IMG/VR virus record: IMGVR_UViG_3300026521_000471 | Span: 62,001-126,000 of that record | DNA: 64,000 bases | Reading direction: 5' to 3' (one strand) | Shown: piece after piece, positions 1,251 through 56,287 of the stretch | How positions within the stretch are numbered: position 1 is the first letter of the stretch | Layout: each line of letters opens with the position of its first letter | The notes under the pieces: model-generated | Databases searched by the model: none | Seen by the model: the letters and a program-made list of their open reading frames with translations, nothing else | Told to the model about the DNA's origin: nothing | Position numbers and translations under genes: made by a program

Positions 1251-1427
1251 ATGGACAGAACTAAATATACTGAAGAAATATTTAATGAGATAAAAAAATT
1301 ATCTGAAAGAGATTTACGAGTCGGACAAACCTTTGAAATTATAAGAGGACAGGCTGGAGATTTATTTTCTATGGAAAATTATAAATTGCTTGAACTCTTA
1401 AAAAATCTAAATGCATCCTTTAAATGA
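1251..1427 (+). CDS. Small hypothetical protein (58 aa, MDRTKYTEEIF...)
   Basis: Not in ORF track; AAGGAG RBS and TAAG-N11-TATAAT promoter upstream; stop overlaps the next ATG. Confidence 0.65.
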   Translation: MDRTKYTEEIFNEIKKLSERDLRVGQTFEIIRGQAGDLFSMENYKLLELLKNLNASFK

Positions 1428-2032
1428 TGAAATTAACACTTTCAGAACTTATTAATTTAATTGATGAAAATAACAGTCCATTTTATATTCTTGTAGCCGG
1501 TTCAGTAGGTAGTGGAAAATCTTATTTAGTTAATCAATATTTATCTCATTTAAAATTAATTGATCCGGATATGTTTACAATGCAATTGGGGGATGGGATA
1601 TATGATAGTAAAAATGTTGCTAAATCTATGAGTTTAGTTAAGAAAACAGTAAAAACATATTTAGATGATAAAATATCATTTATTCAACAAGGAACTTCAG
1701 CTAACTTACAATCAACAATTAATAAATTAATATTAGCAAAAGAAAAAGGGTATAATACTGTATTATTTTACGTCGATACCATTCCTGATAAAGCAGAAGA
1801 ATATATTAAAATGAGAGTATCAAATAATGGTCATGGTTCAACAATTACTAAAGATAAAATAAATCGTACTTATGAAGGATCGAATTTTACTTATCGATTT
1901 TTAACTTCTGAAGTTAAAAATGTCTTTTCAATAGAAGAAAAAGAAAGAATTGATGAAATATTGAATAAATTTAAGTTATCCAGAGATAAATTGAGAAGTA
2001 ATTTAGATTATTTTATTAGAATTGAAAATTGA
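1424..2032 (+). CDS. P-loop kinase, zeta-toxin/AAA_33-like
   Basis: Walker A VAGSVGSGKS followed by IDPD, typical of zeta-toxin-like kinases. Confidence 0.7.
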   Translation: MMKLTLSELINLIDENNSPFYILVAGSVGSGKSYLVNQYLSHLKLIDPDMFTMQLGDGIYDSKNVAKSMSLVKKTVKTYLDDKISFIQQGTSANLQSTINKLILAKEKGYNTVLFYVDTIPDKAEEYIKMRVSNNGHGSTITKDKINRTYEGSNFTYRFLTSEVKNVFSIEEKERIDEILNKFKLSRDKLRSNLDYFIRIEN

Positions 2033-2068
2033 ATTATTTTGATATAAATAAAATAAAAAGGATTTTTA

Positions 2069-2500
2069 ATGAGACTTAATAACATTATTAAAACAAGTAA
2101 AAATAATTTAAACGAATCAACTATTGATATAATTGTAGGTAACAAATTATCAGATATAGTAACATCGAATAAAGTACCTAAACACTTTATCAAATTAGAA
2201 AATGAATTAGCAGTAGGTAAATTTGAGGGTGATATATATAACTTATATACATCTTTATATTCTCAGCTTAAAAAATATAAAGGAAACCCATGTATTGTAA
2301 ATTACGTGGATGGAATTGAATTTCAAATTATAGAAATTGATAAATCAGGGCTAAATATCATGACGTATGATTTTTGGGATAATATTAATGAAGTAGGTGA
2401 TGATTTTGAAACCACTAAACCAATATCTGTAAAGCCAGATAAAACTGTAAAACATATAAAAATGCCATTTGATTTTAGTATTATTTCACAATTTTTATAA
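2069..2500 (+). CDS. Hypothetical late protein
   Basis: TATAAATA at 2043-2050; N-terminus MRLNNII...NES. Confidence 0.65.
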   Translation: MRLNNIIKTSKNNLNESTIDIIVGNKLSDIVTSNKVPKHFIKLENELAVGKFEGDIYNLYTSLYSQLKKYKGNPCIVNYVDGIEFQIIEIDKSGLNIMTYDFWDNINEVGDDFETTKPISVKPDKTVKHIKMPFDFSIISQFL

Positions 2501-2572
2501 AATTGTATAATTATTATTAAGGTATGAGATAATTTCAATAACCCTAAAAGATAAATTCAATAGGACTTAATA

Positions 2573-3424
2573 ATGAAAGAAATAAATAAAACTGTTGTAC
2601 GTAAAACCTTCTTAGATTTTGCAAAAGCACACAATTTAACAAATGGGAATTTAATAGACACCCTCAGTAATTATGGGAATATAGATTTCTTTAATAATAT
2701 TACATTATCTATATTAGATAAACCTGCTTTTACTCACGATAAAAATAATTCTAATAATATATCGGCACTTACCTATGTTCCTCATAGTGTTAAAGATAAA
2801 TTTGTGGAGTCTGTCGAGATTATATCATTTAATAATCTCTATCAGGGAATAATACATAATATGGAATTTAATTATGAGAATTACCCAAAATTTTTAAGGT
2901 TATTATTTGAAGTACGTAAAGACCTAAAAAAAGAATATTCCGAAACACACAATAATTTATTTGATACAACTCAAATGCTTATTAAATTATATTTAAATAT
3001 GGTTTATGGAATGATTGATAATGAGCGGTCAATTCTAACATCATCGAATAGCACTCCACGAAGTTATATAACAAAAGTGGGTACTGAAGCTGTATTAACC
3101 ATCGTTTCTTTTTTATTAAATAAATCATATCCAATTTTTTATATTGATACTGATGAAATTCACACCAATAAATTAACAGATGCAGACTTTAATGAATTAG
3201 ATTCACTTATTTCTAAAAACCTAAATAATATCAATACTAGTATAACTACAATCGATCGTGAAAATGAAATAAGAAATGCTTATTACATAGCTAAAAAAAG
3301 GTTCTTAATAGGTAATATGAATAGCAGAGGTATGAAAACACCAGATATCAATGATATTTTAAAAGAGAATAAGAAATTTTTTGGACATAAATATCCGGAT
3401 ATTTTTCCAGAATACCGTATTTGA
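2573..3424 (+). CDS. Family B DNA polymerase palm/finger-like fragment, probably inactive
   Basis: Motif B KLYLNMVYG, motif C YIDTDE; motif A degenerate (ISFNNLYQGII, no catalytic Asp); only 283 aa; ends FPEYRI. Confidence 0.6.
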   Translation: MKEINKTVVRKTFLDFAKAHNLTNGNLIDTLSNYGNIDFFNNITLSILDKPAFTHDKNNSNNISALTYVPHSVKDKFVESVEIISFNNLYQGIIHNMEFNYENYPKFLRLLFEVRKDLKKEYSETHNNLFDTTQMLIKLYLNMVYGMIDNERSILTSSNSTPRSYITKVGTEAVLTIVSFLLNKSYPIFYIDTDEIHTNKLTDADFNELDSLISKNLNNINTSITTIDRENEIRNAYYIAKKRFLIGNMNSRGMKTPDINDILKENKKFFGHKYPDIFPEYRI

Positions 3425-3461
3425 AATAATTTATATAAATAAACTAAAAAAGGAACACCTA

Positions 3462-3773
3462 ATGAAAAAAGAAACGTTAAAATCAATTTTTAATAATATA
3501 GAATTGAATGAAAGAGTTTTAGAGCCTGCAGGTTGGTTACATTTTGATAAAGAGTGTTTAGCACAAGAAAAAATCAAAATTTTAAAGAAATTTAATTTAG
3601 AAGAATTTGAAATTATAAACTTTTTAAATAGTATGCCGAATTCTCGAAATGTTAATGATACTATTAGAAAAATTGGTGCAAAAGGTGGATTAGAAAGATT
3701 CTTAAGATATAATCCAGTAGAAAAAAGTTTAACAAAACAAGTAATAGAACGGATGATTAAAAGAGGTTATTAA
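3462..3773 (+). CDS. Hypothetical late protein
   Basis: ORF track 3381..3773; start moved to ATG 3462 after TATAAATA 3434-3441 and AGGA RBS. Confidence 0.6.
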   Translation: MKKETLKSIFNNIELNERVLEPAGWLHFDKECLAQEKIKILKKFNLEEFEIINFLNSMPNSRNVNDTIRKIGAKGGLERFLRYNPVEKSLTKQVIERMIKRGY

Positions 3774-3829
3774 ATATTATTTAAGCTAAATTTGAATATA
3801 ATTATTTAATAATTTATAAAGGGATTAAT

Positions 3830-5131
3830 ATGGGTGGAAACGCAAGATTTATAGATAGACAAACGGGTAAAGATAAAGGGTTTGCTGAAAAAATTGATTT
3901 AAATAAAATCCCTAGAGATACTATAATCAATGAAGTAACAACTTGTTTATTGTCTATTAATAAAAAAATTAATGAGAAAAAAGGTAATTATTTGTGGCCT
4001 GATATTGAAATCATTAAACAAGGCTATATATTTAATGGTTCCAGTTTTTCATTATTTGATAGAACTATATCAGATGAGGATTTTATTAAATTTAAACCCT
4101 TAGTCGGTGACATTGATGTTACATTTCCAAAAGAATATATGAAAGATTTATGGGATGTTTTAAATGACTTGGAAAATGTTGAACTTTCTAAAAATATTAC
4201 ATATATGGGACATAAAAATTCTACAATTGAACCAAGTAAAGCTGGTAATCTTAATCAAATAAATGCTGTATTTCGATTTGATAATGATGATATATCTACA
4301 TATATACAAATAGACTTTGAAGCCTCTGAATATCATGACAATATGCCAACTGAATGGACAATGTTTTCACATAATTCAGATTGGGAAGATATAAAAAATG
4401 GATTTAAAGGTGTGATGCATAAATTCACTTTAATTAATCTTGCTAGAGCATCTTCAAAAATGACTGATATAAAAGTGGTTACACCGACACAAGTCAAGAA
4501 AATAGAAGATGTAACATCTATTGAATATGCAGACTTTCTAAAACAAAGTAAAAAAAATAAGCTTGCAAAAGTTTCTACTAAAAAAGATTTCATAAACCCC
4601 ACAAATTTAGCTTTTTCTGTTGATAAAGGTGTGCGATTGAAATTCCGTCAATTATTCCATAAAGATGGAGTACCAGCAAAAATCGATAATTTATCGGTTT
4701 TTGTTTTTGTAGCGCCAAATGAATCAAAATATGAAACAGATTTAAAAACCATTTTTAGTTTATTTTTTCATACGGAACCAGAAGCCAATGACCTTATTAA
4801 TTTCAGATCATTTGTAGGTGTAGTTGGGTTAATGAAAAAATATCTAAATCAATCAATCATTGAAGATTTTTTTATTAATCATCTTATCAAAAAATCACTA
4901 TTTGGTGAAGGAGCTCAAGGCTTAGAACGTAATAATCCTACTGAGGATAAAAAAATCAAAACAAATATGATTAATAAATTATATTCTGAATTTGATTATT
5001 TAAAAAAGTTCAATAATGAAGTTGAAGATCTTAAAACCAGATATTATGCAGCTTATAAAATGTATGATGAAACCGAAGGTAAATTTATCTCTAAATCTTT
5101 TTCTCAAATATTCGAATCAGTTAATATATAG
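3830..5131 (+). CDS. Pol-beta-superfamily nucleotidyltransferase-like jumbo-phage protein
   Basis: FNGSS...VGDIDV and QIDFE acidic motifs; MGGNA start typical of this phage family. Confidence 0.55.
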   Translation: MGGNARFIDRQTGKDKGFAEKIDLNKIPRDTIINEVTTCLLSINKKINEKKGNYLWPDIEIIKQGYIFNGSSFSLFDRTISDEDFIKFKPLVGDIDVTFPKEYMKDLWDVLNDLENVELSKNITYMGHKNSTIEPSKAGNLNQINAVFRFDNDDISTYIQIDFEASEYHDNMPTEWTMFSHNSDWEDIKNGFKGVMHKFTLINLARASSKMTDIKVVTPTQVKKIEDVTSIEYADFLKQSKKNKLAKVSTKKDFINPTNLAFSVDKGVRLKFRQLFHKDGVPAKIDNLSVFVFVAPNESKYETDLKTIFSLFFHTEPEANDLINFRSFVGVVGLMKKYLNQSIIEDFFINHLIKKSLFGEGAQGLERNNPTEDKKIKTNMINKLYSEFDYLKKFNNEVEDLKTRYYAAYKMYDETEGKFISKSFSQIFESVNI

Positions 5132-5851: not shown

Positions 5852-6210
5852 TGGATGATCTCAGGCTATTAATTTATTTTAATAGGAATCGCAAAGAATC
5901 ATCAAATAATTGTTAAATTTAATCTATATATAATAGACAGTAGTTGCAGGAATTGAATTCTCCTAAGACGACTCAATGTGCTAATAATGAAAGGTTAGCA
6001 GTCGCTATATTCTCTGTAAGTGAGATAAGTATGGAAATAAGTTGGTAAAACCAAATGACACCATAAACATTTAAGAAATGTAGTTTGATAATTAGTATGA
6101 AATAACAACCTACGGTTATCAGAGGGTCATCCGACAGATAATTAAGTTTATCTGACCCGTACCTTGGAATAGGTCTAGCGATATTATATATATTTTATAA
6201 ACTATCTTTA

Positions 6211-6865: not shown

Positions 6866-7790
6866 TCGAAACTGATACCACTAAGAAATCTTTGGATTTT
6901 TTAATGGTGCTAGTCACCCATAGTATGATATGGATAACGGGGATAGTATCCCCCGAAGACGGATTTGACAATTCCGTGCTACTTAATTGTAGTCAATTCA
7001 TACAAGCTGACACTTAGGTAGGTTTGTTGCCTATCGGATACTGAAATGTGTCCTATTAGTGAAGTATTGGAATCTGCAGACTAACAATCTGCGTATGTGA
7101 GAGCCATTCGGTGTAGCATACAGAAGCTAGGGATAGTGAAAGGTTCATCCAACAATACGAATTAAGAATAGTGAACAGTAGAATAGGTGTTTGAGTGTAA
7201 AAACAAAGGCTGCTATTCAATACAATAGTATGAGTCCATAAGGCTTACTGCTAGAAGTATGGTGGAAATCGAAAGATGGAAGCAAAGGGTGTGTTGTATT
7301 CTGAAGGTCATACTTTGGAGCAACTGAGCAGACACACCCTTGTCATTATCGTATAGCTCAGGGTAGAGCGTTTTCATTTTAAGGAAAAGGTCGAAGAGTC
7401 GAATCTTCTACGGAAATATTAAAACGGAAAGTTCTGCTCCCTATGTAAAAGGTCGAAAGACCCGACGAAAATAGCCTAATCGCTGACAGTTTAACTGAAT
7501 TGGCGACAATTAGTACCTCCCAAGGGGAAAGTTGTTTGATAGGATGCAGCATTTATTGGGGTAGCTCCTCATTAACGGCCTGTAAGAAGGACGGAAGAAT
7601 GTTGATAATCGAGTAGTCACATAGTAGAGAGGAAATGCTACCTCTGTAAAAAACAAAGCGGCTATGGGAATCAACTATAATGTACTGGGGACAGTAGTTA
7701 TAGTGGATAAGGAGAGAACCTTTTATGGGGACATAATTGGATAATGCTCTGAATGGATTTCTACTAAAAGGTGTAATCTCAACCTTTTAA
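6866..7790 (+). ncRNA. GOLLD-like giant ornate RNA
   Basis: About 900 nt ORF-free, GC-enriched, hairpin-dense region after promoter 6837-6858; GTGTG..TGTATTCT..AGCAACTGAG..ACAC, CGAGTAGT and 3' GTAATCTCA hairpin resemble GOLLD as I recall it; next to tRNAs, with an embedded tRNA. Ends approximate. Confidence 0.7.
7347..7416 (+). tRNA. Degenerate tRNA-Lys(UUU)-like element embedded in the GOLLD-like RNA
   Basis: TAGCTCAGGGTAGAGC D arm, TTTTC-ATTTTAA-GGAAA anticodon arm, aberrant T loop (GTCGAAT), no CCA. Confidence 0.55.
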
Positions 7791-8426: not shown

Positions 8427-8511
8427 GGAAGCGTAGTCAAGTGGTCAACGACGGCAGACTGTAAATCTGCTCCCTATGGGTTCGGTGGTTCAAATCCACC
8501 CGCTTCCACCA
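8427..8511 (+). tRNA. tRNA-Tyr(GUA)
   Basis: GCAGA-CTGTAAA-TCTGC, V arm, CCA. Confidence 0.95.
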
Positions 8512-8570
8512 TAGAAAAAAATAAAAAATTAAGTTAATCTAAAGGATTAATTTGGTATAATAACTTTATA

Positions 8571-8743
8571 AATTGATTGAAATATGAAAACTTGAAAACG
8601 GATTAAACTGTGGTGGTTTATGATGTGGCGAAGTTGTAAACAAAAGAGCCCGGACCATTAGTAAAAGACTAACCATCTTTGAAAGTGGTACGGAAGCTGT
8701 TTGGATGAAGACGGGTACTAAAGTTTTCATTTTTCAGTCAATT
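8571..8743 (+). ncRNA. Structured RNA domain closed by a ~23-bp stem, abutting the permuted tRNA
   Basis: IR 8571-8593/8721-8743 with G.U on the + strand; GC-enriched multibranch interior. Confidence 0.5.
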
Positions 8744-8776
8744 GATTGAGAATTAAACTAAGAAAATACATCGAAG

Positions 8777-8869
8777 TAAAACCGCTGACATATTGTCTTG
8801 TTGGTTCGAGTCCAACCTTCCCCACCAGTTTATATGGGTGAAGTGGTGAAATTGGTAAACACGGCGGAT
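8777..8869 (+). tRNA. Circularly permuted tRNA, best reconstructed as Leu(UAA): 3' half 8777-8827, spacer, 5' half 8836-8869
   Basis: 3' half has V arm, T arm and CTTCCCC-A-CCA; the downstream 5' half GGG(T)GAAG-TG-GTG-AAATTGGTAAA-CAC-GGCGGAT complements both acceptor and anticodon stems; flanks 8744-8772 and 8867-8901 pair. Confidence 0.65.
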
Positions 8870-8920
8870 GATAAAATATTTCTTAGGATTCAATCTCAAT
8901 CAGGTCTGAAATAAAAAAGC

Positions 8921-8997
8921 GGACAATTAACTCAGTTGGTTAGAGTCACCGCCTCATAAGCGGGAGGTCGCTGGTTCGAGTCCAGCATTGTCCACCA
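8921..8997 (+). tRNA. tRNA(CAU), probably Ile2 (lysidine type, reads AUA)
   Basis: CTCATAA loop, GTCGCTGGTTCGAGTCCAGCA Ile2-like T arm, CCA; leader A uses ATA four times. Confidence 0.85.
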
Positions 8998-9673
8998 TCA
9001 ATACAAAAGTATCATTCAAAATCATTTTAATTTCACGCTCCTTTAAAACTATTAAATTATTAACAACGTCCCATTTTGCTTTATCTCTTTCTCGTTCATA
9101 TCCTTTAACTTCAATAAATATATTTAAATCGGGAATATAAAAATCTGGAAAATATAAGTGTTTTCTTCCTTTCCATTCATATTCAAATGGTTCTGTATCT
9201 CTAATATAGTTAATATCATGTTCCACTAAATATTTTGCTACTATCACTTCCCATGTTCCATGAAATTTATCTCCATTAAATTCAATTATTTTTACTCTAC
9301 CACAAACGTTATTAGCAGAATAACTATCTGGATTATTACGAACCATATCTCTCATTCGTTCTGATTGTTCAATTTTATACTTAGTACTTTTCATATATGC
9401 TTGAAAATTATCTGACATAAAGCCTTGAGGTTCCCAACCATTAATTTCCATATTATGATGTTTGGTCCAATAATGATTTCTAAATTGACCAATAGTTTTA
9501 AAATGTTTATCGCATTTATTACAAATATACTGATTATTATCTATATTAAGAAATTTATCTGACAACATATCTCTTTGATTTTTTTCACAAGCTTTTGTAC
9601 CTATATGACTTTTTAATTTAGTTAAAGAACTAAACTCTTTTCCACAATCAGAACATATTTTTGAGTCATTCAT
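8954..9673 (-). mobile_element. Free-standing homing endonuclease-like gene (C2H2 zinc fingers + PD-(D/E)XK domain)
   Basis: CSDC..H, CNKC..H..H fingers; YFPDFYIPDLNIFIEVKG nuclease motif; antisense insertion in the tRNA cluster. Confidence 0.7.
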
Positions 9674-9768: not shown

Positions 9769-10265
9769 TTATTACTCTTATTTATACTTATTTTTAATCA
9801 ATTTTAGAAACTTTCTAATATTTTCAAAGGAATTTAAGTTTATTTTAATATATATTATTGTATAATATTATAAATAAAAAGGTTATTAAAAATTATATTA
9901 GCCCACCATTAAAATAATTGATTGCTTAAAGATTTCTTTGAAATTTTTCAGCAGTTAATAGAAATATTAACTTTAGCAAATGAGCCCAAGTATCACCCGA
10001 AGCTATTAAGTAGGGATTGCCTCTCCATTGGAAGATGGCTTGGGAGCCGATTTAAACCGAAGTACAACTCTGTACAAGGACAGTTTTAAAACTGGTGGTT
10101 ATGTGCTTTATTCCTAAAAGCAATGAGTAAAAATTAAGCGTGAAAAATAAAACTCAAAAATAAGGACAGAAAGATGAATTTTACATTTAGTAAGTCCTAC
10201 TATAAATCAGTCTAATTCAATAGGGTTTGTAGTAGGACGTTAATATAATAACAGAAAACTACAAA

Positions 10266-10341
10266 CCCGTTGAAGCTAACTAAGTAGAAGCGCTGGTCTG
10301 AAAAACCAGAGGAGTTGGAGCGTTACCAACCAGCGGGACCA
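10266..10341 (+). tRNA. Non-canonical tRNA-Phe(GAA)
   Basis: Full cloverleaf and CCA, CTGGT-CTGAAAA-ACCAG; no GG in the D loop, T loop AGCGTTA. Confidence 0.75.
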
Positions 10342-10352
10342 TTTTAATTAAT

Positions 10353-10430
10353 GGGACCGTCGAATATCCGGTGACTGTTCGTTGGACTGAAAATCCAAAG
10401 GTAGAGGTTCGACTCCTCTCGGTCCCACCA
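10353..10430 (+). tRNA. tRNA-Phe(GAA)
   Basis: TTGGA-CTGAAAA-TCCAA, T loop TTCGACT, CCA. Confidence 0.9.
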
Positions 10431-13025: not shown

Positions 13026-15212
13026 ATGAAATGGAATATTAATAAAAAATTAAAAGCCATGACAATCATTCCGAGTATAATAATGATATTTGGATTTGGT
13101 TATCTGGTTTATACCGATTATAATGAATATCGAGATTTAGTTGTTTTAGAAAAAACAGTTAAAATCGATACACATATTAATCATTTAGTGCATTTCTTGC
13201 AACAAGAAAGAGGAGCTAGTGCTGGATACGTAGCATCCAATGGTAAAAAATTTAAAAATCAACTATCTGAAATTCGTAAAAAAACTGATACAAAATTCAC
13301 TATCTTAGAGAAAGCATTAAAAGGTAACAGAAATCATTTTACATTAGAAATGTCTAGAAAAATAGATGAGGCACTTCAAATGTATAACGAACTTTCCGTT
13401 ATGCGAAGTAGTATTGATAATTTAACAATAACCGTTCCAGAAACTGTTAAATACTTTAGTTCCATGAATGCAACCTTTTTAGATTTTATTAAACTAAGTA
13501 AAGATTTATCTAATGATAATGAATTTTCAAAACAACTTTCAGTAATTACAGCTATTAGTGCTACAAAAGAATTAGCAGGTAAAGAAAGAGCTGTTATGAC
13601 AAGTGTTTTTGCTAAAGATAAATTTATAGATGGTTTCTATGCACAATTTAAAACTTTAGTAGCATTACAGAAAAGTTATATGGAAAGTTTTAGATTACTT
13701 GCAACTCCAACAGCAATTAAAATTCTTAATGAAATATCTTCTACTTCTCCTTTTTTAGACGTTGAAGAAATGCGAAAGATTGCAATGGAACGAAATAAAG
13801 ATGGGGCTTTTGGTGTTGACTCGGTAAGATGGTTTGATACTATGACTAAAAAAATAAATGGTATGGAACAAATCGAACATAAATTAGAAAATATTCTTCT
13901 AGATGAAATTGATAGTCAAATGAAATATTTATTGTCGATGGTTATTACAATGTTTATCCTTGCAGTCTTAATTACATCTAGTTTAACTTATGCAGGGTAT
14001 AAATTTAATAAATTTTTAATCGATAGAGTGAACAAGATGAATATTATTTTAGAAGATTCTATTAATACTCATAGCTATGATGAACAATTATTAATTTCTA
14101 ATGATGATGAATTATCAAAGATAGAAAATGCAATTAATAAAATGTTTGTGAGTTTAACTGAAGCTGCAGAGGCTAGAAGAATTTCGGATATTGAAATAAA
14201 GAAAAAAGCTGAAGAAACTGCAAAACTATTAGCAAGAAATAATATGAATCTTAAACTGAATAAACTAATGAGTACGCATACAACCGATAACCTAAATGAT
14301 ATTAAAGATGGGCTGAGTGATGGGACTGAAGAATTAGAAAAAATTAATGAAATTAATGATAAAGCCCAAGATAATTTTAATTCTGTTATTGCGGCTAAAA
14401 ATACTATGGTTACTACTTTAGAAACCGTTTCTGAAGGAATGAATTCTACAACAGAAAGAGCGGAACAATTAGAAGAATCTGTTAATGAAATTGCAAGCAT
14501 TATTGGTTTAATCAAAGATATTTCTGAACAAACAAACTTACTTGCACTTAATGCAGCTATTGAAGCAGCAAGAGCGGGTGAGCATGGACGAGGTTTTGCC
14601 GTGGTTGCTGATGAAGTTCGTAAACTAGCTGAGAGAACAGCTGTTGCAACTAAGAATGTAGAAGCGAGTATTAATATCGTTAAACAAAATACTTCTGAAA
14701 TGAATGAAAGTACTGAACAAATGACAGAAAGTATTAAAGATGCTCAAGAGGTATCTCATACTCTAGATGTAGAATTAGACACCTTAATATCTATCAATAG
14801 AAATAATACTGTTAGAAATAATATGATTAGTGAAGATATTCTTGTTACCCTTACTAAATTAGAACATGTTATTTTTAAAATAATGGGTTATAATAGCGTT
14901 TTAGAAGAATGTACAAAATGTGAACCTGTCACTCATGAAGCTTGTAGATTTGGACAATGGTATAAAACTGAGGGAAAAAATAGATATAGTAAAAATTCAT
15001 CTTTTAGAAGTATCGAAATACCGCATAAAGAAGTCCACGAAAATGTTAGAAAAGCCGTTGAATTAATAGGCAAAAAAGATGATGATACTATTATTCGATA
15101 CTTTGAGATCGTAGAAGTAAATTCTAAAAAATTATTTGATCTTTTGACAAGAATAGTTAAAGAAGAAAATGATAAAATGGTTCTGGAGATTAATGATGGA
15201 AAAAATAAATAA
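13026..15212 (+). CDS. Methyl-accepting chemotaxis protein with NIT sensor and C-terminal CZB domain
   Basis: [17 protein letters not shown] (NIT)-TM-HAMP; [35 protein letters not shown] signalling tip; [16 protein letters not shown]. Confidence 0.9.
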
Positions 15213-22983: not shown

Positions 22984-25131
22984 ATGCAACTGAAAGATTT
23001 ATTATGTGAAAAAATCACTCCAACTGATAAAGATATTATCGATTGTGTTACAGCTGTTGGTATAAAAGGTATGTATTTAAATGCCACCGATAAAAAAGAG
23101 TTACCAAAAAATAATAAAGTTTTAAATTCCTATAATAAAATACAAAATGATTTTATGTTCATTATGAAAAAATTTACTACATTGACTAAATTTTATTTTA
23201 GAGAATCAGATAAAACAATGAAAGGTAATACTGAGAAAGCAGCACAATATCTATTATTAAATAAAGATAAATATAACACAATTAAATCAACATATGACTT
23301 TATTGAAAAGAGTATTAAAACATTTAAAAGTAATACTAAAAAGATAAAAAAAATTATTAATAATTCTAGGAAATCTAAAAATGAAAAACTACTTTTAGAT
23401 TTAGATATTCTGGAATCTAAATTAACTAAAACATTAAGTTTAATAAATTATACAGAAAGAACTTTGGATAATGTGAAATCTGTTTTAGATTTAGTAGAAA
23501 AACCTAATTTCCAATCAGCATTCGGAATTGTTACAACTTTAAAAGCCAAAAATAAAGTTTTAACTGAAAATGCTATGCTTGACATAAGTATCCCGAATCT
23601 AGATAAAGTTGTAACCAATGATGAAAAATTAGAAACTTTTTTATTAGATTATTATCGAATAGAAGAAAAATTTGATGGGACAAAACTGACGTTATGGCGA
23701 AATAGCAATGAATGGGAAGAAGATTATCGTAAAAATTGGGTAGTTTCATTTAAAAACCAAATTTTATATCCAGCTGAATTTGACAAGATTGATAGAAATA
23801 TTATTAAAAAATATTCATTAGGTATTTCACAATATGCATTTATTCATGATCACCTTAAAAGATTTCATAAAAATACTAAAGATATACCAACAAATACTGA
23901 ATTCTTTATAGAATTTATACAAAATAAATTAACCACTACTAGAGATTATAAAAAACAACATGATCTATTTCTTATTGCTTATTCACCTGCTAAGGGAAGT
24001 ATTGAGGGTGGCATGCTAAAGACCTCCCCTATTGGGTTTTTTCAGCAGGATTTAAATATATTTAGTGAAATCTTATCTTTAAAAATGCCTCCCGTAGTTT
24101 TTCATGGACAAATAAATTCTGAAGAAAATTTTACGAAAGGCATTAAAAATAATAATCTTATGAATGCTTGGATTAGTAATAAACATTTATTTGAGAAAAA
24201 TAAATATGATACTATTAAGAAAACATTATTATCATTTGAATCTATATTAGGTGGAAAAACTGAGGGAGTAGTACTTCATTCTTCTAGTGGCACAATGTTT
24301 AAATTTCTACAAGATGACCAACATGATAAAAGTGTAAGATTTGCTAAAAAATTAAGATTTCAAAATAGCAAAGAAATTGAAGAAAAATATTGGTCTGAAA
24401 TTTATATTTTAGCTAAGGAAAATATAGACAATATAGAAAATCTTAATAGTAATAATTATGAAATAAATCTTAGTAAAATAGTTAAAGCTATTTATAGTAT
24501 TAAAGATAATAGAATTAAAAGTCTTTTTACCTTTAAATTTAAAGCCATGAAAAAAGAAGATAAATTGACTGATGATAAGGCTTTAATACAAAAGATTAGA
24601 GATGATTTGCATTTAACATCAAAACAATTACTTATGGATAAGCTTCCTGAAAATCAGAACGCACTTTTTATTGGGAAATTAAGAGTACCTACTAAAGCTC
24701 ATACTGATATTATTAGAAAAGCTATAGACAAGTATAATCATGTGATTATTTGTATTGTGAAAGCCAAAAAAGATAATAAACTGTCTTTAAACTTAGAATA
24801 TCAAAAAAAGATTCTAAAAAGATTATTTGGTGAAAAAGTAACTATTATTGAACATAGTACTGGAAACTTAACTTCAATTATAAATAAATCACCAAAAAGA
24901 ATTAAATTCTTATTAACCGGTACTGATAGAATTGAAAGTTATAAAGGTCAGTTAAAAAGACATCCTCAGATCAATATGATTGAAATAGAAAGGGATGAAG
25001 AATCAGTTGATAATATTTCAGCCACAAAAACAATAGATTATATTAGAAATAATAATATAAGTGGTTTTAAGGAAATGGTGGATATAGAAATATGGGATGA
25101 ATTTGAGAATATAAGAGAGGTGTTAAAATGA
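22984..25131 (+). CDS. ATP-dependent ligase-like nucleotidyltransferase fused to an HxGH cytidyltransferase-like domain
   Basis: Motif I IEEKFDGTK, EFFIEF, EGVVL, FKF; C-terminal GKLRVPTKAH...GTDR. Confidence 0.65.
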   Translation: MQLKDLLCEKITPTDKDIIDCVTAVGIKGMYLNATDKKELPKNNKVLNSYNKIQNDFMFIMKKFTTLTKFYFRESDKTMKGNTEKAAQYLLLNKDKYNTIKSTYDFIEKSIKTFKSNTKKIKKIINNSRKSKNEKLLLDLDILESKLTKTLSLINYTERTLDNVKSVLDLVEKPNFQSAFGIVTTLKAKNKVLTENAMLDISIPNLDKVVTNDEKLETFLLDYYRIEEKFDGTKLTLWRNSNEWEEDYRKNWVVSFKNQILYPAEFDKIDRNIIKKYSLGISQYAFIHDHLKRFHKNTKDIPTNTEFFIEFIQNKLTTTRDYKKQHDLFLIAYSPAKGSIEGGMLKTSPIGFFQQDLNIFSEILSLKMPPVVFHGQINSEENFTKGIKNNNLMNAWISNKHLFEKNKYDTIKKTLLSFESILGGKTEGVVLHSSSGTMFKFLQDDQHDKSVRFAKKLRFQNSKEIEEKYWSEIYILAKENIDNIENLNSNNYEINLSKIVKAIYSIKDNRIKSLFTFKFKAMKKEDKLTDDKALIQKIRDDLHLTSKQLLMDKLPENQNALFIGKLRVPTKAHTDIIRKAIDKYNHVIICIVKAKKDNKLSLNLEYQKKILKRLFGEKVTIIEHSTGNLTSIINKSPKRIKFLLTGTDRIESYKGQLKRHPQINMIEIERDEESVDNISATKTIDYIRNNNISGFKEMVDIEIWDEFENIREVLK

Positions 25132-26732
25132 AAATTTCCGATTTAAAAGGATTAAAAAAAGATGATAAACTTCGTTTTTTACAATCTGTGGATATTGAAA
25201 AATTAGATGATGAAATTTTAAAGAAATTATCTAATGATGCGGCAATCGACGTCCGTTTAAAAATAGCTCGTAAATGCCCTTCATCGAAAATTTTATTAGA
25301 TATGATGTTTAATAAAAAAAATTGGAAACCTCATATTATATCAGAAATTTATATGAATAAAGCATTTACTATTGAAAATAAGATAGAGTTTATTAAGTCT
25401 AAAAAATGGCAGGAGAACTTATTTCCATTTCACCAAGTAAAATTTGATTTGGTTAGAGATCTAAACAATCCTGAATCAAACGACGATTTTATTGATTTAA
25501 TTATATCTTTTTTAGAAGAAGATCCGGAAGGAACTCCTATAAATTTTGTACGTAATGCTATATATGGGACTTCAAAAGAAGAATTATTAAAGATTATAAA
25601 CCTAACAATGATGAAAAAAGACAATTATTTAAATTTATTTTTAGGACATTCCCATGTAATAAATCTATTATCTGTAAAGGAATTAAGAAATCTATTTAGT
25701 AAATATGCTGATAATAGTATAACTTTTATTCACTTTGAAAGTCCATTTTATAGATCAATTATAAATGATGAGATTTTTAAGAAACTATTAAAAAATAGTG
25801 ATTATATAGGTCAAAATAGTTTTAGTTTAATTAGTTTAGATTCTAAAATTGTATTCTTTAATAATCCTGATATTTCTCAATATATCTATGATGATATATT
25901 AAATGAATATATTAATGCCGATATTAAACTGCGCATGGCTATTGGTTCTAAAAAATATAATGAAATAGTTAAATATATTAAATTAACAGAAGATACTAAT
26001 AAAAAGGTTATTAACTTTGCTTTAGAATTGAAAAAACTAGATGCTGATTTAGCTAACACAATATGGTTTTCTTATATATCAAATGAAACGGCTATTTTCA
26101 AATTGGTAAAAGACAATCTTAAATTTTTTAATAATAGTGCTAGAAATCTAGCCTTTTTATCAGATAATAAATCCTTTAAAGATGATGAAGTAAATGAACT
26201 TGTAGATGAAGCTATAAATAATTCGGATAACCCTACTGAAAAGACTTTATCGCTTTTTAAACATATGCTAATAAATGGTGAGGCTCCTAGAAATGACTTA
26301 ATAAATAAAGTATGGGAGATTATAAAAGATACAAAAGTTGAAAGAGAAGATAGTGTAAATAGTGATGACCCAATAACAAATATTTTTAAACGATTTTTTA
26401 ATACTTCTGCAACAAAAAATAGTTATGGGCAAAAAGCTAAAGTACCAAAAGAAATTCAAATTGAAAAAGCTTTAGAATATTATATGAAATTTATGATTCC
26501 AGATTGGTTAGTTTACTCTGATGATTTACCAGAAGAATTATGGGAAGAAATCTTAGACCATCCAAAATTAAAAGATTTGATTGTTGCACCTCATAGTTCA
26601 GACTTTTTTATTTCATTAAAGGAACAAATTTTAACTGGTAAGTATCAAGCAAAATTCGGTATGAAATATTATGAACAAACAAATGATGAAAGATATATAC
26701 CTGAAGAAGTAAAAAATATATTTTTATTTTAA
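25128..26732 (+). CDS. Helical-repeat hypothetical protein (possibly virion-associated)
   Basis: LRV-like repeat near the N-terminus; C-terminal RYIPEEVKNIFLF. Confidence 0.6.
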   Translation: MKISDLKGLKKDDKLRFLQSVDIEKLDDEILKKLSNDAAIDVRLKIARKCPSSKILLDMMFNKKNWKPHIISEIYMNKAFTIENKIEFIKSKKWQENLFPFHQVKFDLVRDLNNPESNDDFIDLIISFLEEDPEGTPINFVRNAIYGTSKEELLKIINLTMMKKDNYLNLFLGHSHVINLLSVKELRNLFSKYADNSITFIHFESPFYRSIINDEIFKKLLKNSDYIGQNSFSLISLDSKIVFFNNPDISQYIYDDILNEYINADIKLRMAIGSKKYNEIVKYIKLTEDTNKKVINFALELKKLDADLANTIWFSYISNETAIFKLVKDNLKFFNNSARNLAFLSDNKSFKDDEVNELVDEAINNSDNPTEKTLSLFKHMLINGEAPRNDLINKVWEIIKDTKVEREDSVNSDDPITNIFKRFFNTSATKNSYGQKAKVPKEIQIEKALEYYMKFMIPDWLVYSDDLPEELWEEILDHPKLKDLIVAPHSSDFFISLKEQILTGKYQAKFGMKYYEQTNDERYIPEEVKNIFLF

Positions 26733-32363: not shown

Positions 32364-34214
32364 ATGAGAACAAACTATAATTTAGAAATTAGAAAAAATT
32401 ATATAGATAAGGAAGTTACGGTTTCGGGGTGGGTTAATTCAATCCGTGACCATGGTGGCGTTTACTTTATTGATTTAAGAGATACTTCCGGTATTGTACA
32501 AATTGTTGCAAATCCAACTTCTTTAACAGAAGATGAATATGAAAAGTATCACGCTTTAAGAGATGAGTGGGTAATTGAAGTTACTGGTAAAGTTAGACTT
32601 CGTGGAGAAGGTCTTGAAAATCCAAAATTATTAACTGGTGAAATTGAAATTGTTGCAGAAGATTTAAAAATTCTAAGTAAAGCAAAAACATTACCGTTCC
32701 AACCTGGAGACGAATCTGTTAATGATGATTTAAAGCTTAAATACAGATATTTGGATATGAGAGATAACAAACTGCAGGATACTCTTACTAAAAGAAGTGA
32801 TATGGCGTTTAATATCAGAGTTGCTCTGCATAACGAATTAGATTATGCGGAAATCGAAACTCCAATCTTAATGAAGTCATCTGAAGGTGGAGCAGAAGAA
32901 GTATATGCCACTTCTAAACTATTTCCTGGAGAATTCTATTCACTGCCACAATCACCACAATTATATAAACAGTTACTTATGATTGGTGGGAGAGAAAAGT
33001 ATTATTCATTTGCAAAATGCTTTAGAGCTGAAAGTGCTCGTAAAGATAGAAACATCGAATTCACACAAATAGATATGGAACGATCTTTTTCAGATAGAAA
33101 TGGTATTTTAAAAGATGTTACTAAAGTTTTAACTGCAGCTTTTGAAACAACCAATGTCGATTTTGATAAAATTAATAATGATGTTAGAGAAACAGTCCGG
33201 TGGCTTGATAGTATTAGTATTGAAGGTGAAATTGATTCTTCAGCTGATATTTTAATTCCTATGATCAAATACAATGACGCATTAAACTACTTCGGTAGTG
33301 ATAAGCCGGATTTACGTTTCAAAATGTCATTGATTGAAGCTAAGAAACTTTTTATTAATACTGATTTTACGGTTTTTAAAGATATTGCTAAAAAGGATAA
33401 TACAGTTGTTAAAGCTTTAGTGGCTAAAAATGCAGACTATCCAGACAAACTATCTAAAAAGAAAATTAAAGATTTAGAAAAATTTGTTAGTGAATTTGGA
33501 GCTAAAGGTTTAGCTTATTTTCAAATGAAAGAAGAAGGCCTAAAAGGTCCTTTAACTAAATTTCTAAAACAAGTGGATTTAGATTTAATCCAAATTGAAT
33601 GTGAATTAGAAGTAGGTGATATTGTTTTCTTTGGAGCAGGTGATAAAGATACCGTTTTAGATTACATGGGTCGACTAAGAATTAAAATAGCAGAAGAGTT
33701 AAATTTAATTAATGATAAATTCATACCATTATTTGTTACTGATTTTCCTATGTTTGAAAAAGGTAAAGACGGCACAATTAAAGCTATGCACCATCCATTT
33801 ACAGCACCTATAATGGAATCTTATACAAATTATTTAAATGATGAATGTGACCTTACAGAAATTCTTACTGATAGTTATGATCTTGTTTTAAATGGTGTGG
33901 AATTAGGTGGTGGTTCAGTAAGAATTTATGATGAAGAGTTACAAGAAAATATATTTAAGATTATGGGGCTTACTGATGAGGAAATAAAAGAAAAATTTGG
34001 TTTCTTTACAGAGGCTTTACAGTATGGTACTCCGCCACATTGTGGATTTGCTTTTGGTTTTGATAGATTAGTTTCACTATTATTAAAAAAAGAAACTATT
34101 AGAGAAGTAATAGCATTTCCTAAAAATCAAAGTGGTCTATGTCCTATGTCTGAATCACCAAATAAACCGGATGTTAATCAATTAAAAGAATTAGGTTTAA
34201 GAATAAAATCTTAA
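32364..34214 (+). CDS. aspS: Aspartyl-tRNA synthetase, bacterial type, probably non-discriminating (Asp/Asn)
   Basis: RDHGG..FIDLRD OB fold, LPQSPQLYKQLLM, CFRAE, EFTQIDME, GAD insert, PPHCGFAFGFDRL. Confidence 0.97.
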   Translation: MRTNYNLEIRKNYIDKEVTVSGWVNSIRDHGGVYFIDLRDTSGIVQIVANPTSLTEDEYEKYHALRDEWVIEVTGKVRLRGEGLENPKLLTGEIEIVAEDLKILSKAKTLPFQPGDESVNDDLKLKYRYLDMRDNKLQDTLTKRSDMAFNIRVALHNELDYAEIETPILMKSSEGGAEEVYATSKLFPGEFYSLPQSPQLYKQLLMIGGREKYYSFAKCFRAESARKDRNIEFTQIDMERSFSDRNGILKDVTKVLTAAFETTNVDFDKINNDVRETVRWLDSISIEGEIDSSADILIPMIKYNDALNYFGSDKPDLRFKMSLIEAKKLFINTDFTVFKDIAKKDNTVVKALVAKNADYPDKLSKKKIKDLEKFVSEFGAKGLAYFQMKEEGLKGPLTKFLKQVDLDLIQIECELEVGDIVFFGAGDKDTVLDYMGRLRIKIAEELNLINDKFIPLFVTDFPMFEKGKDGTIKAMHHPFTAPIMESYTNYLNDECDLTEILTDSYDLVLNGVELGGGSVRIYDEELQENIFKIMGLTDEEIKEKFGFFTEALQYGTPPHCGFAFGFDRLVSLLLKKETIREVIAFPKNQSGLCPMSESPNKPDVNQLKELGLRIKS

Positions 34215-55691: not shown

Positions 55692-56287
55692 AAGAGTTAA
55701 TTAAAGCAACTAAAAAATTTGATAATTTCTTAAAAATGCAATTATATGTCATTTTTATAATCAGTATGAGTTGGTCTTTGATACTACCTTTAATAACTAA
55801 ATTACAAGGATTACTTTGGGCTACTAGTATTATTTCTATTTTTTTAATATTGACTAAATTAACAGCTTTTATAGCTCCAAGATTTAAAAATATTAAATTG
55901 CATTTAGCATATAGAAATCTAATTATATTAGATGGACTTTATCTTCTAAGTCTTTCAACATATTTTATAAGCCCGTTGTTATTCTTGTATGTTGAAGGTG
56001 TATTAATGTTAATCTATACAATTATAATGTCGGTTTTTGGTATTAGATATGATGCCTTTTTAATGAAAAAATACGATATTACTACTTTTGAAAACGTTCA
56101 ATATGCTGAACGTATTTCAATGGCAACAGCATCAATCATAGGTTATTCTATTGTTGTACTATTAGATCTGTTTACAAATAGTATTTCAACAGTTTTATAC
56201 GTTTTCATTATAATTTTATTAATCAATCTATTGATGCAGATTTACAATTATATATTTTATTGGAAAAGGTTGAATATTGGAAATTAA
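55688..56287 (+). CDS. Multi-TM membrane protein (MFS-like half)
   Basis: About six hydrophobic segments. Confidence 0.65.
   Translation: MKELIKATKKFDNFLKMQLYVIFIISMSWSLILPLITKLQGLLWATSIISIFLILTKLTAFIAPRFKNIKLHLAYRNLIILDGLYLLSLSTYFISPLLFLYVEGVLMLIYTIIMSVFGIRYDAFLMKKYDITTFENVQYAERISMATASIIGYSIVVLLDLFTNSISTVLYVFIIILLINLLMQIYNYIFYWKRLNIGN

What the first reader, a model, noticed from the sequence alone, without database searches (positions are those of the whole stretch)
8744..8901. Circularly permuted tRNA-Leu(UAA)-like gene in a phage
Seen: a tRNA 3' half (8777-8827: TAAAACCGC, V arm, T arm, CTTCCCC-A-CCA) lies before its 5' half (8836-8869: GGG(T)GAAG...GTG-AAATTGGTAAA-CAC-GGCGGAT), separated by 8 nt. 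Joining the halves gives a 7-nt loop A-U-UAA-AA on a 5-bp stem and a Leu-type D loop with A15:U48. The outer flanks pair over about 25 nt (GATTGAGA/TCTCAATC, CTAAGAAA/TTTCTTAG), bringing the two break points together. TTA is the dominant Leu codon here and no ordinary Leu(UAA) is in the window. The junction (exon ends U, leader ends G) echoes group I splice sites and the engineered permuted intron-exon design. Established: permuted tRNAs are known from red and green algae, nucleomorphs and a crenarchaeon and mature via a circular intermediate. I know of no phage case. Caveats: bulged U in the acceptor stem, no clear position 26, and a Tyr(GUA) reading is possible.
Basis: partly seen in the sequence, partly recalled or inferred. 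Interest (0 to 1): 0.8.

Follow-up and report, generated by a model that had tools for sequence, protein, structure and literature searches.

The report
Phage tRNA mimic, not permuted tRNA
The back-to-front tRNA is real and is transcribed, but it most likely belongs to the known YrlA/Y-RNA class of tRNA look-alikes, which are shaped like circularly permuted tRNAs, and is not a gene that matures into a working leucine tRNA.

Summary
At 8742-8903 a tRNA 3' half (8777-8827, ending ACCA) lies 8-9 nt upstream of its 5' half (8837-8869), and the outer flanks pair. Joined in silico, ARAGORN calls tRNA-Leu(UAA). Two independent DNA assemblies show the same order, so it is not a misassembly. Two metatranscriptomes hold an RNA contig that ends at or within 4 nt of the CCA (8827, 8823).

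Homologous elements in two related phage contigs keep both flank helices through compensatory changes. Their acceptor stems are short closed hairpins without CCA, and they lack the anticodon stem. A strain variant carries a 1-nt insertion in the would-be anticodon loop.

The topology (5'/3' basal stem, V arm, T arm, acceptor stem, D arm) is that of YrlA, which its authors describe as resembling circularly permuted tRNAs. M. smegmatis YrlA is cut by RNase P and gains CCA. Metagenomic elements with the same T loop and Leu-type D arm sit upstream of Ro60 genes.

Rfam's YrlA model does not score this element, and the window holds no Ro60. I read it as a new variant of a known kind. A spliced, functional tRNA-Leu remains possible (about 8%).

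The parts
8534..8561 (+). Putative promoter: weak -35 (TTAATC 8534-8539) and extended -10 (TGgTATAAT 8553-8561). The predicted start is about 8568-8570.
   Evidence: My reading; the consensus scan did not list it. A TATAAT is kept in L155. A TATAAT lies 8-12 nt before the first helix strand in L042 and L082. Inferred.
8572..8744 (+). A structured RNA domain of about 175 nt of unknown family, closed by a helix of about 21 bp. It is co-transcribed with the tRNA-like element and is a separate module. In L042 it lies downstream of the element, and it is absent next to the L082 element.
   Evidence: Fold z = -3.9. It is 65% identical to L042 1725-1912(-), with compensatory changes in the closing helix. 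RNA contigs cover 8599-8827 and 8622-8823. There is no Rfam match.
8742..8751 (+). Basal helix H1, 5' strand. It pairs with 8894-8903.
   Evidence: MFE fold. Core GATTGAGA/TCTCAATC becomes AATTGAGA/TCTCAATT in L042 and AATATAGA/TCTATATT in L082. Three of 8 positions changed on both sides and none is broken (my count).
8758..8765 (+). Basal helix H2, 5' strand. It pairs with 8879-8886.
   Evidence: CTAAGAAA/TTTCTTAG becomes GTAGAAAA/TTTTCTAT in L042 and ATTATAAA/TTTATAAT in L082. Four of 8 positions are compensatory and none is broken.
8767..8776 (+). Conserved single-stranded motif UACAUC(GAAG) on the 5' side of the internal loop. AUCGAAG matches 6 of 7 positions of the YrlA motif GNCGAAN0-1G.
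   Evidence: UACAUC is kept in L042 and L082. Similar UACUUCGA and UACAGCAA motifs sit at the same place in other class members. The motif definition comes from PMC4201824.
8777..8827 (+). tRNA 3'-half analogue: UAAAA, anticodon-stem 3' strand CCGCU, V arm, T arm, acceptor 3' strand CUUCCCC, A73 and an encoded CCA.
   Evidence: The RNA contig of run X7 ends exactly at 8827 and that of X9 at 8823. Positions 8799-8835 are 35/37 identical to the tRNA-Tyr 3' end plus trailer of L082.
8828..8836 (+). Loop that closes the acceptor stem in the primary transcript (GUUUAUAU plus G). The presumed RNase P cut lies 5' of G8837.
   Evidence: Sequence. G8828T in L155 is tolerated. RNA depth falls from 29 to 0 after 8827. 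The cut itself is inferred by analogy with M. smegmatis YrlA.
8837..8869 (+). tRNA 5'-half analogue: acceptor 5' strand GGUGAAG, U8 G9, Leu-type D arm, anticodon-stem 5' strand GGCGG, and AU.
   Evidence: The D arm is identical to that of closed-acceptor mimics found next to Ro60 genes.
8879..8886 (+). H2, 3' strand.
8894..8903 (+). H1, 3' strand, the end of the element. tRNA-Met follows at 8921.
   Evidence: C8901T in L155 keeps the pair as G.U.

Best explanation
Positions 8742-8903 encode a YrlA-like (bacterial Y-RNA-like) tRNA mimic. This is a non-coding RNA whose 5' and 3' ends pair into a long basal stem (H1, H2, then a 5-bp anticodon-stem analogue) that carries a tRNA-shaped head: V arm, T arm, acceptor stem and a Leu-type D arm. 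It is transcribed from a promoter near 8556 together with an upstream 175-nt structured module. This copy has a 7-bp acceptor stem, A73 and an encoded CCA. The head is therefore most likely opened by host RNase P 5' of G8837, and the upstream piece trimmed back to CCA. That gives a two-piece RNA held together by the acceptor, anticodon-analogue and basal helices, as shown for M. smegmatis YrlA. It has no anticodon loop and does not decode. It would act through its tRNA elbow and CCA end as a scaffold or decoy for a tRNA-binding partner, such as a Ro60-like protein, an RNA-repair or decay enzyme, or a tRNA-targeting host nuclease. Shown here: the anatomy, transcription, the 3' end at CCA, covariation of the basal helices, and kinship with Ro60-adjacent mimics. 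Inferred: the RNase P cut, the two-piece state, and the partner and role.
For: 1. Topology. The order of elements equals that of YrlA. [quoted passage not shown] M. smegmatis YrlA, which has a 7-bp stem, is cut by RNase P and gains CCA in vivo.
2. Relatives. L042 and L082 keep H1 and H2 with 7 of 16 positions compensatory and none broken. Their acceptor stems are closed 6-bp hairpins with no CCA.
3. Class survey. The pattern T loop - N12-42 - Leu-type D arm gave 122 metagenome hits, of which 31 have at least 6 of 7 acceptor complementarity, against about 1.6 expected. About 22 are distinct closed-acceptor mimics.
4. Ro60 neighbours. L126 and L181 lie upstream of, and on the same strand as, TROVE+vWA_Ro60 proteins. 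They also sit beside Rfam YrlA hits.
5. Covariance model. A model built from 22 such elements, excluding the window lineage, scores the window element at 74 bits (E 2e-25). Ordinary His->Leu and Glu->Leu tRNA junctions in the same window score 40 bits.
6. RNA ends. RNA contigs cover 8599-8827 (ending at A76) and 8622-8823 in two metatranscriptomes, whereas the DNA contig reads through.
7. CCA precedent. Permuted elements carrying CCA and the same acceptor sequence lie next to DUF2828-vWA proteins in other phage contigs, L016 and L034.
Against: Rfam RF02553 (YrlA) gives no match here even at E<=10. Its D arm is of the GCUCAGU..GAGC type, not the Leu type. No TROVE/Ro60 or DUF2828 protein was found among ORFs of at least 150 aa in the 64-kb window, whereas published YrlAs lie within 4 kb of Ro60. 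The remaining roughly 160 kb of the phage contig could not be read. The GNCGAAG motif matches only 6 of 7 positions and is not kept in L042. The class used for the covariance model was collected with a pattern taken from this element, so the 74-bit score is partly circular. This copy is more tRNA-like than its relatives: it has a full 5-bp anticodon stem, loop halves that join to a 7-nt U33-UAA-A37 loop, and an encoded ACCA. That is what a real permuted tRNA would also show. No RNA contig covers the short 5'-half piece.
Confidence: 0.7

Rival explanations
1. It is a true permuted tRNA-Leu(UAA) gene. The flank helices bring 8869 and 8777 together, a nuclease removes the flanks and a phage or host RNA ligase seals the anticodon loop. 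RNase P and 3' trimming then open the acceptor end, giving a tRNA that reads the dominant TTA codon.
For: The joined halves score as tRNA-Leu(UAA) with U33, A37, A73, CCA and A15:U48. TTA is 59.6% of Leu codons and no other Leu(UAA) tRNA is in the window. The RNA 3' end is at CCA. The phage encodes an RlaP nucleotidyltransferase, a family that travels with RNA ligases. ORF 22984-25131 resembles phage cytidylyltransferase-like proteins, some of which are fused to RNA ligase domains; this is only a weak lead. Wang et al. raise this possibility for some YrlAs.
Against: L155 has an extra A in the would-be anticodon loop, which would make it 8 nt. L042 and L082 lack CCA and the anticodon stem but keep the flanks. 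There is no BHB motif and no known bacterial or phage enzyme for such an excision. RNA contigs are continuous across 8776|8777 and no go-back joint was reported. Pfam and PHROGs found no confirmed ligase or RtcB in the window.
Confidence: 0.08
2. It is a functionless remnant of a tandem tRNA pair, either Tyr-Leu or a duplicated Leu, whose outer halves decayed.
For: Positions 8799-8835 are 35/37 identical to the tRNA-Tyr 3' end plus trailer of L082. The T arm-to-D arm stretch is 83% identical to Tyr|Leu junctions of Bacillus Herelleviridae phages. This fits the dimeric-tRNA origin model for YrlA.
Against: Origin is not the same as present state. H1 and H2 covary across three lineages with no broken pairs. 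The element has its own promoter in L042 and L082. It is transcribed and 3'-processed. The acceptor and anticodon strands are 11 of 12 complementary. The element scores 34 bits above real tandem junctions.
Confidence: 0.07
3. It is a two-piece (permuted) tmRNA-like molecule. The acceptor piece with its 175-nt upstream domain would serve as an mRNA-like part, and the short piece would supply the 5' acceptor strand.
For: Gene order is 3' acceptor piece before 5' piece. There are weak Rfam tmRNA_permuted hits of 14-19 bits, E 0.6-0.75. The long RNA piece ends in CCA.
Against: The hits are far below the gathering score of 47, and ARAGORN finds no tmRNA. There is no G3.U70. A real D stem and V arm are present. 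The only short ORF in the 175-nt domain changes frame between the window and L042 (my reading). The domain is absent next to the L082 element and is placed on the other side in L042.
Confidence: 0.02
4. It is a natural permuted intron-exon group I ribozyme that self-splices the halves into a circle.
For: The exon end is U and the leader end is G. About 200 nt of structured RNA lies upstream.
Against: There is no group I match of any subtype at E<=10. No sequence downstream of 8869 can pair with GCGGAU to form P1. The upstream domain is a self-contained module that is relocated in L042 and missing in L082.
Confidence: 0.01

Closest known systems
YrlA (Y RNA-like A) of bacteria and mycobacteriophages, especially M. 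smegmatis YrlA (Chen et al. 2014, PMC4201824; Wang et al. 2018, bioRxiv 10.1101/312249; Rfam RF02553)
   Same: The 5' and 3' ends form a basal stem. The order is V, T arm, acceptor stem, D arm. The tRNA elbow nucleotides and the A15:U48 pair are present. There is a 7-bp acceptor stem with a CCA end after processing. The element is encoded among tRNAs in a phage. A dimeric-tRNA origin is plausible.
   Different: The D arm is of the tRNA-Leu type, so RF02553 does not score the element. CCA is fully encoded in the genome. There is a canonical 5-bp anticodon-stem analogue with loop halves that would join into a Leu(UAA) loop. No Ro60 gene lies within 64 kb. The Ro-binding motif is only approximate. 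The element is linked to a 175-nt module and to a GOLLD RNA.
Circularly permuted tRNA genes of Cyanidioschyzon merolae, green algae, nucleomorphs and Thermofilum
   Same: The 3' half precedes the 5' half. The leader and trailer pair. The acceptor end is closed in the precursor and opened by RNase P/Z.
   Different: Those genes have a BHB motif that is cut by the splicing endonuclease and ligated into a circle, and their anticodon loop is conserved. Here there is no BHB and no such enzyme is known. The loop is not conserved in the strain variant, and relatives have closed, CCA-less stems.
Two-piece (permuted) tmRNA of alpha-proteobacteria and cyanobacteria
   Same: The gene is permuted, and two RNA pieces are held together by helices with a CCA end on the upstream piece.
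   Different: There is no alanine identity pair, no tag reading frame, no pseudoknots and no model match.

Membership tests
YrlA / bacterial Y-RNA-like tRNA mimics | The 5' and 3' ends pair into a basal stem, and the internal order is V arm, T arm, acceptor-like stem, D arm | tested here: met
YrlA / bacterial Y-RNA-like tRNA mimics | Conserved tRNA elbow: T loop UUCGAGU, G18G19 in the D loop, and the 15:48 Levitt pair | tested here: met
   ARAGORN cloverleaf of the joined halves. A15 and U48 can be read.
YrlA / bacterial Y-RNA-like tRNA mimics | Acceptor stem closed by a loop, or, where it is 7 bp, opened by RNase P with a CCA end (M. smegmatis) | tested here: met
   Primary transcript loop 8824-8836. 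The stem is 7 bp with one mismatch. RNA contigs end at 8827 and 8823. The stems are closed hairpins in L042 and L082. The RNase P cut itself was not tested.
YrlA / bacterial Y-RNA-like tRNA mimics | GNCGAAN0-1G motif near the 5' end (putative Ro60 site) | tested here: inconclusive
   AUCGAAG at 8770-8776 matches 6 of 7 positions. L082 has AUCGUAC and L042 has AUCACAA. UACAUC is the conserved part.
YrlA / bacterial Y-RNA-like tRNA mimics | Encoded within about 4 kb of a Ro60 (TROVE) gene, on the same strand | tested here: not met
   No TROVE, vWA_Ro60 or DUF2828 protein in any ORF of at least 150 aa in the window, and none by phmmer with three Ro-like queries. The feature is met for class members L126 and L181. 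The rest of the 224-kb contig was not readable.
YrlA / bacterial Y-RNA-like tRNA mimics | Reaches the score of Rfam RF02553 | tested here: not met
   No match at E<=10. RF02553 also misses the Leu-type elements of L126 and L181 while hitting their neighbours.
YrlA / bacterial Y-RNA-like tRNA mimics | Bound by Ro60/Rsr | not testable with these tools
   Needs immunoprecipitation.
Circularly permuted tRNA genes | The 3' half lies upstream of the 5' half, and the joined sequence folds as a complete tRNA | tested here: met
Circularly permuted tRNA genes | A bulge-helix-bulge motif at the leader/trailer junction | tested here: not met
   Read. Between the anticodon-stem analogue and H2 the loop sides are 16 nt (8766-8781) and 11 nt (8868-8878). 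At most a 3-bp GAU/AUC mini-helix can form. There are no paired 3-nt bulges separated by 4 bp.
Circularly permuted tRNA genes | A ligated (circular, then mature) product exists | tested here: inconclusive
   No 8869->8777 joint in four runs. These are assembler contigs that drop small and rare RNAs.
Circularly permuted tRNA genes | Anticodon loop and stem conserved among relatives | tested here: not met
   L155 has a 1-nt insertion. L042 and L082 have no anticodon stem.
Two-piece tmRNA | G3.U70, a tag reading frame, pseudoknots, and a model match | tested here: not met
Group I permuted intron-exon | Group I catalytic core and a P1 pairing with the exon end | tested here: not met
   and my reading.

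The most novel reading that the evidence does not exclude
This copy may have gone one step further than a mimic. After RNase P opening and trimming to the encoded CCA, the two-piece RNA is charged by LeuRS, which does not read the anticodon. It then either works as a charged tRNA-like effector or is cut and sealed by the phage's RNA-repair enzymes into a real tRNA-Leu(UAA) for the dominant TTA codon. That would be the first permuted or split tRNA of a bacterial virus, and a living intermediate between tRNA dimers, Y RNAs and permuted tRNAs.
Probability: 0.08. Interest if true: 0.9.

Novelty: new variant of a known kind. Interest (0 to 1): 0.45.

Why it matters
The case shows that a 'permuted tRNA' seen in raw phage sequence is best read against the Y-RNA/YrlA class. 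It also extends that class in three ways.

1. There is a Leu-type D-arm subclass that the Rfam model misses. It is common in metagenomes and in two cases lies next to Ro60.
2. Here a phage copy has no Ro60 within 64 kb, a fully encoded CCA, and an environmental RNA 3' end at that CCA.
3. A module of GOLLD RNA, tRNAs and the tRNA mimic is shared by three phage lineages (window, L042, L082), and an extra 175-nt RNA accompanies the mimic in the window and L042.

The contrast between the window (open, CCA-bearing, full anticodon stem) and its relatives (closed hairpin) gives a natural series. It could be used to test how tRNA dimers turn into mimics, and whether some mimics are charged or re-spliced.

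Tried and rejected
- **Misassembly.** Rejected by the X2 DNA contig and by L155.
- **Close phage relatives.** GenBank phages gave no megablast hit for the first 20 kb. The distant hits are ordinary Tyr|Leu junctions.
- **Synteny through ORF 3830-5131.** It found only the source contig.
- **Synteny through the zinc-finger endonuclease ORF 8954-9673.** P0003 led to L042. P0002, P0004, P0011 and P0016 led to unrelated contexts.
- **A wasted scan.** I mis-typed a 17-nt pattern for the 175-nt domain by missing an indel, so the 10 hits are chance matches.
- **Pattern with the TCTCAAT flank.** It found only the source contig.
- **Ro60 in the window.** Pfam on 38 ORFs, PHROGs on 10, and phmmer with three Ro-like proteins were all negative. 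The HEAT-repeat protein 25128-26732 shows no similarity to Ro60.
- **Ligase next to RlaP.** ORF 55688-56287 looks like a membrane protein.
- **Group I, tmRNA and self-cleaving ribozyme families.** None was found at E<=10 in 8500-8930.
- **Supplementary YrlA alignments** of Chen et al. are not held, and the Annual Review on Ro60 is not held.
- **Acceptor-stem covariation in the class.** It is not independent evidence, because I selected those sequences for complementarity.

Full report
**What is there.** The window is part of a 224-kb phage contig from a hydrothermal-vent metagenome (IMGVR_UViG_3300026521_000471 = Ga0256828_1000004). It has 28% G+C.

Between tRNA-Tyr (8427-8511) and tRNA-Met (8921-8997) there is no credible ORF. 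The sequence reads in this order:
- a TATAAT box at 8556-8561;
- a stretch of about 175 nt that folds into a self-contained domain closed by a long helix (8572-8744, z = -3.9);
- the element in question, 8742-8903.

The tRNA 3' half (8777-8827) comprises:
- UAAAA;
- CCGCU;
- a V arm;
- the T arm GUUGG-UUCGAGU-CCAAC;
- CUUCCCC, A73 and CCA.

The spacer GUUUAUAU plus G follows. Then comes the 5' half (8837-8869):
- GGUGAAG;
- UG;
- the D arm GUG-AAAUUGGUAAA-CAC;
- GGCGG and AU.

ARAGORN and Rfam find nothing in the native order. On the joined halves ARAGORN returns an 84-nt tRNA-Leu(UAA) with one U3.C70 mismatch and the break between positions 33 and 34.

The flanks pair as two helices:
- H1 is 8742-8751 with 8894-8903.
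- H2 is 8758-8765 with 8879-8886.
- The flank duplex is -19.9 kcal/mol against -7.5 +/- 2.6 for shuffles (1 of 2000) and 15 of 2000 for equally spaced genomic controls.

TTA is 59.6% of Leu codons, and no ordinary Leu(UAA) tRNA is among the 22 tRNAs of the window.

**It is not an artefact, and it is expressed.** An independent DNA run from an epibiont metagenome holds a contig colinear with 8516-8958. A 221.5-kb contig from another sample (L155) has the same arrangement at about 97% identity.

Two metatranscriptomes from different samples each hold one RNA contig over this region:
- The X7 contig covers 8599-8827 and stops at A76 of the encoded CCA.
- The X9 contig covers 8622-8823 and stops at the last base of the acceptor strand.

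Depth falls from 29 to 0 after 8827, whereas the DNA assembly reads through. That marks an RNA 3' end.

The same contigs run unbroken across 8776|8777, the cut that a permuted-tRNA pathway would need. No joint 8869->8777 was reported. These are assembler contigs, so small or rare species could be missed.

**Relatives decide the reading.** A homologue of the neighbouring zinc-finger endonuclease led to a syntenic ENA contig, L042. A metagenome pattern scan gave L082. Both carry the same GOLLD RNA upstream, a tRNA array, and then a homologous element.

In both relatives H1 and H2 are kept through changes on both strands. This is my count:

| Helix | Window | L042 | L082 |
|---|---|---|---|
| H1 | GATTGAGA/TCTCAATC | AATTGAGA/TCTCAATT | AATATAGA/TCTATATT |
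| H2 | CTAAGAAA/TTTCTTAG | GTAGAAAA/TTTTCTAT | ATTATAAA/TTTATAAT |

Seven of 16 positions are compensatory and none is broken.

The heads differ from the window's:
- In L042 the acceptor stem is the closed hairpin TCTTAC-TTT-GTAAGA.
- In L082 it is TATCAA-TTTA-TTGATA.
- Neither has a discriminator or CCA.
- The anticodon-stem analogue is replaced by conserved unpaired ACUCAGCC and AGCAGACUAA.

In L042 and L082 a TATAAT box sits 8-12 nt before H1, so the RNA starts at the foot of its own basal stem. The 175-nt domain lies after the element in L042 and is absent next to the L082 element. It is therefore a separate module.

The strain variant L155 has an extra A (GGCGG-AAU), which would make the joined anticodon loop 8 nt long.

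The conserved unit in this lineage is thus a tRNA-shaped head on a long stem. It is not a splittable tRNA.

**What it is like.** The literature describes exactly this topology as YrlA, the bacterial and phage Y-RNA-like partner of Ro60. YrlA has a 5'/3' stem, then the V arm, T arm, acceptor stem-loop and D arm (PMC4201824). [quoted passage not shown] It proposes an origin from dimeric tRNA transcripts and raises the possibility that some are processed further (bioRxiv 10.1101/312249). M. smegmatis YrlA has a 7-bp acceptor stem. It is cut by RNase P in vitro and in vivo and ends in CCA, and both halves stay bound to Rsr.

I tested the link directly.
- In 31 of them the seven bases after the T stem pair at 6 or more positions with the seven bases before the D arm. 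About 1.6 are expected by chance.
- A few are true tandem duplicates of tRNA-Leu.
- About 22 are distinct closed-acceptor mimics.
- Two of these, L126 and L181, lie upstream of and on the same strand as proteins with TROVE and Ro60-vWA domains. They also sit beside Rfam YrlA hits.
- L126 has the same layout as the window: a basal stem, an internal loop, a 5-bp anticodon-stem analogue, a short V loop in place of the V arm, T arm, acceptor hairpin and D arm.

A covariance model built from 22 such elements, without the window lineage, scores 8771-8876 at 74 bits. The ordinary His->Leu and Glu->Leu tRNA junctions of the window, which share the D arm, score 40 bits. The set was gathered with a pattern from this element, so the score is supportive but not independent.

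An encoded CCA is not unique to this copy. Permuted elements with the same GGGGAAG/CTTCCCC-ACCA acceptor lie next to DUF2828-vWA proteins in L016 and L034. These proteins have the same two-part layout as Ro60. Their kinship to TROVE is my recollection and was not tested.

**Where it fails membership.**
- Rfam RF02553 does not score the element even at E<=10. It also misses the Leu-type elements of L126 and L181.
- No TROVE or DUF2828 protein is in the 64-kb window.
- The GNCGAAG motif is matched at 6 of 7 positions, and only its UACAUC neighbourhood is conserved.

I therefore file it as YrlA-like in architecture and probable descent, in a Leu-type D-arm subclass. I do not file it as a demonstrated Ro60-bound Y RNA.

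**Origin.** Positions 8799-8835 cover the T arm, acceptor 3' strand, ACCA and the 8-nt spacer. They are 35/37 identical to the 3' end and trailer of tRNA-Tyr(GUA) in L082. The V arm and the GUAAA stretch are also Tyr-like, whereas the 5' half is Leu-like. The same Tyr|Leu junction exists as two normal genes in Bacillus phages. Even so, 11 of 12 acceptor and anticodon-stem positions pair, which argues that the head is kept under selection.

**Mechanism proposed.**
- Shown: transcription, the 3' end at CCA, a conserved basal stem, and a tRNA-like head.
- Inferred: RNase P cuts 5' of G8837. Exonucleases trim GUUUAUAU(G) back to CCA. The two pieces stay together through about 29 base pairs.
- Also inferred: the elbow and CCA end engage a tRNA-binding partner. 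The partner is unknown.

The phage has an RlaP nucleotidyltransferase (54861-55691), a family reported to travel with RNA ligases. It also has an AspRS and 22 tRNAs, so an RNA-repair or tRNA-defence context is plausible.

Because LeuRS ignores the anticodon (established knowledge), charging of the two-piece form cannot be excluded.

**Rivals.**
- A spliced functional tRNA-Leu(UAA), about 8%.
- A functionless remnant, about 7%.
- A tmRNA-like molecule, about 2%.
- A group I permuted intron-exon, about 1%.

The evidence for each is set out in the Rival explanations section.

**Verdict.** The element is a new variant of a known kind.

Noticed in passing
window 7284-7785 (+), with an embedded tRNA-like 7347-7416: GOLLD RNA: Rfam 110.7 bits, E 2e-29, below the gathering score of 150. 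It is very strongly represented in metatranscriptomes (depth about 800-1260 in run X6). It is syntenic in relatives L042 (4348-4839) and L082 (913-1402), so GOLLD, the tRNA array and the tRNA mimic form a conserved phage module.
   Followed up: partly
window 8572-8744 (+); L042 1725-1912 (-): A conserved structured RNA domain of about 175 nt with no Rfam family. It is closed by a helix of about 21 bp with compensatory changes and is transcribed. It lies before the mimic in the window, after it in L042, and is absent next to the L082 element. Its first 10 nt (AATTGATTGA, 8573-8582) repeat the start of helix H1 (8741-8750).
   Followed up: partly
L004 5931-6223(-), L012 5373-5668(-), L017 7476-7771, L019 4402-4696(-), L023, L025, L027, L030, L033 9999-10292, L037: A conserved family of permuted tRNA-like genes in IMG/VR contigs. 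The order is: leader GGGAAAACUGAAAGUGUUUACAGUAA, T arm, CUUCCCC-A-CCA, a spacer of about 15 nt, GGGGAAG, D arm, then an intact anticodon-arm-like hairpin whose loop differs between members, and a trailer that pairs with the leader. The break therefore lies in an extended variable arm. ARAGORN missed the L004 copy, the only family locus scanned. The neighbours are a DnaB-like helicase, AntA, an unassigned 544-aa protein and ARPP-1.
   Followed up: partly
L016 about 4200-4450(-) with ORF 2628-4046(-); L034 754-785(+) with ORF 1295-2803(+); also L031, L036, L038: Permuted T arm-acceptor-CCA-acceptor elements lie directly upstream of DUF2828+DUF7788(vWA) proteins in phage contigs. This is possibly a second kind of Ro-like protein and Y-RNA pair.
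   Followed up: partly
window 9966-10372 (+): An expressed non-coding stretch in three metatranscriptomes (contigs 9966-10372 and 10039-10295). It ends in a low-scoring tRNA-like element (10266-10338, 44.7 bits) and tRNA-Phe (10353-10430). Variant insertions were seen between runs.
   Followed up: no
L042 2354-2450 (-): ARAGORN calls a 97-nt tRNA-Leu(UAA) between tRNA-Tyr and tRNA-Ser(GGA) in the relative. Rfam's tRNA model does not confirm it and its arms are irregular. It may be another tRNA-like RNA.
   Followed up: no
window 5962-6062 (+): A weak RAGATH-33 match (33 bits, E 5e-4, gathering score 120).
   Followed up: no
window 13026-15212, 54056-54805, 32364-34214, 62671-63192, 59726-61351: Unusual cargo for a phage: a NIT-sensor methyl-accepting chemotaxis protein, a GGDEF cyclase, an aspartyl-tRNA synthetase, anti-CBASS Acb1 and a GroEL-type chaperonin. 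It also carries RlaP (54861-55691) and NADAR (59207-59722).
   Followed up: no
L110, L143, L119, L159, L135, L112, L174, L102 (acceptor loops): In many Leu-type mimics with a 7-bp acceptor stem, the loop begins ACAA or ACAG right after the stem. This looks like a decayed ACCA, or a site for trimming and CCA repair as in M. smegmatis YrlA.
   Followed up: no
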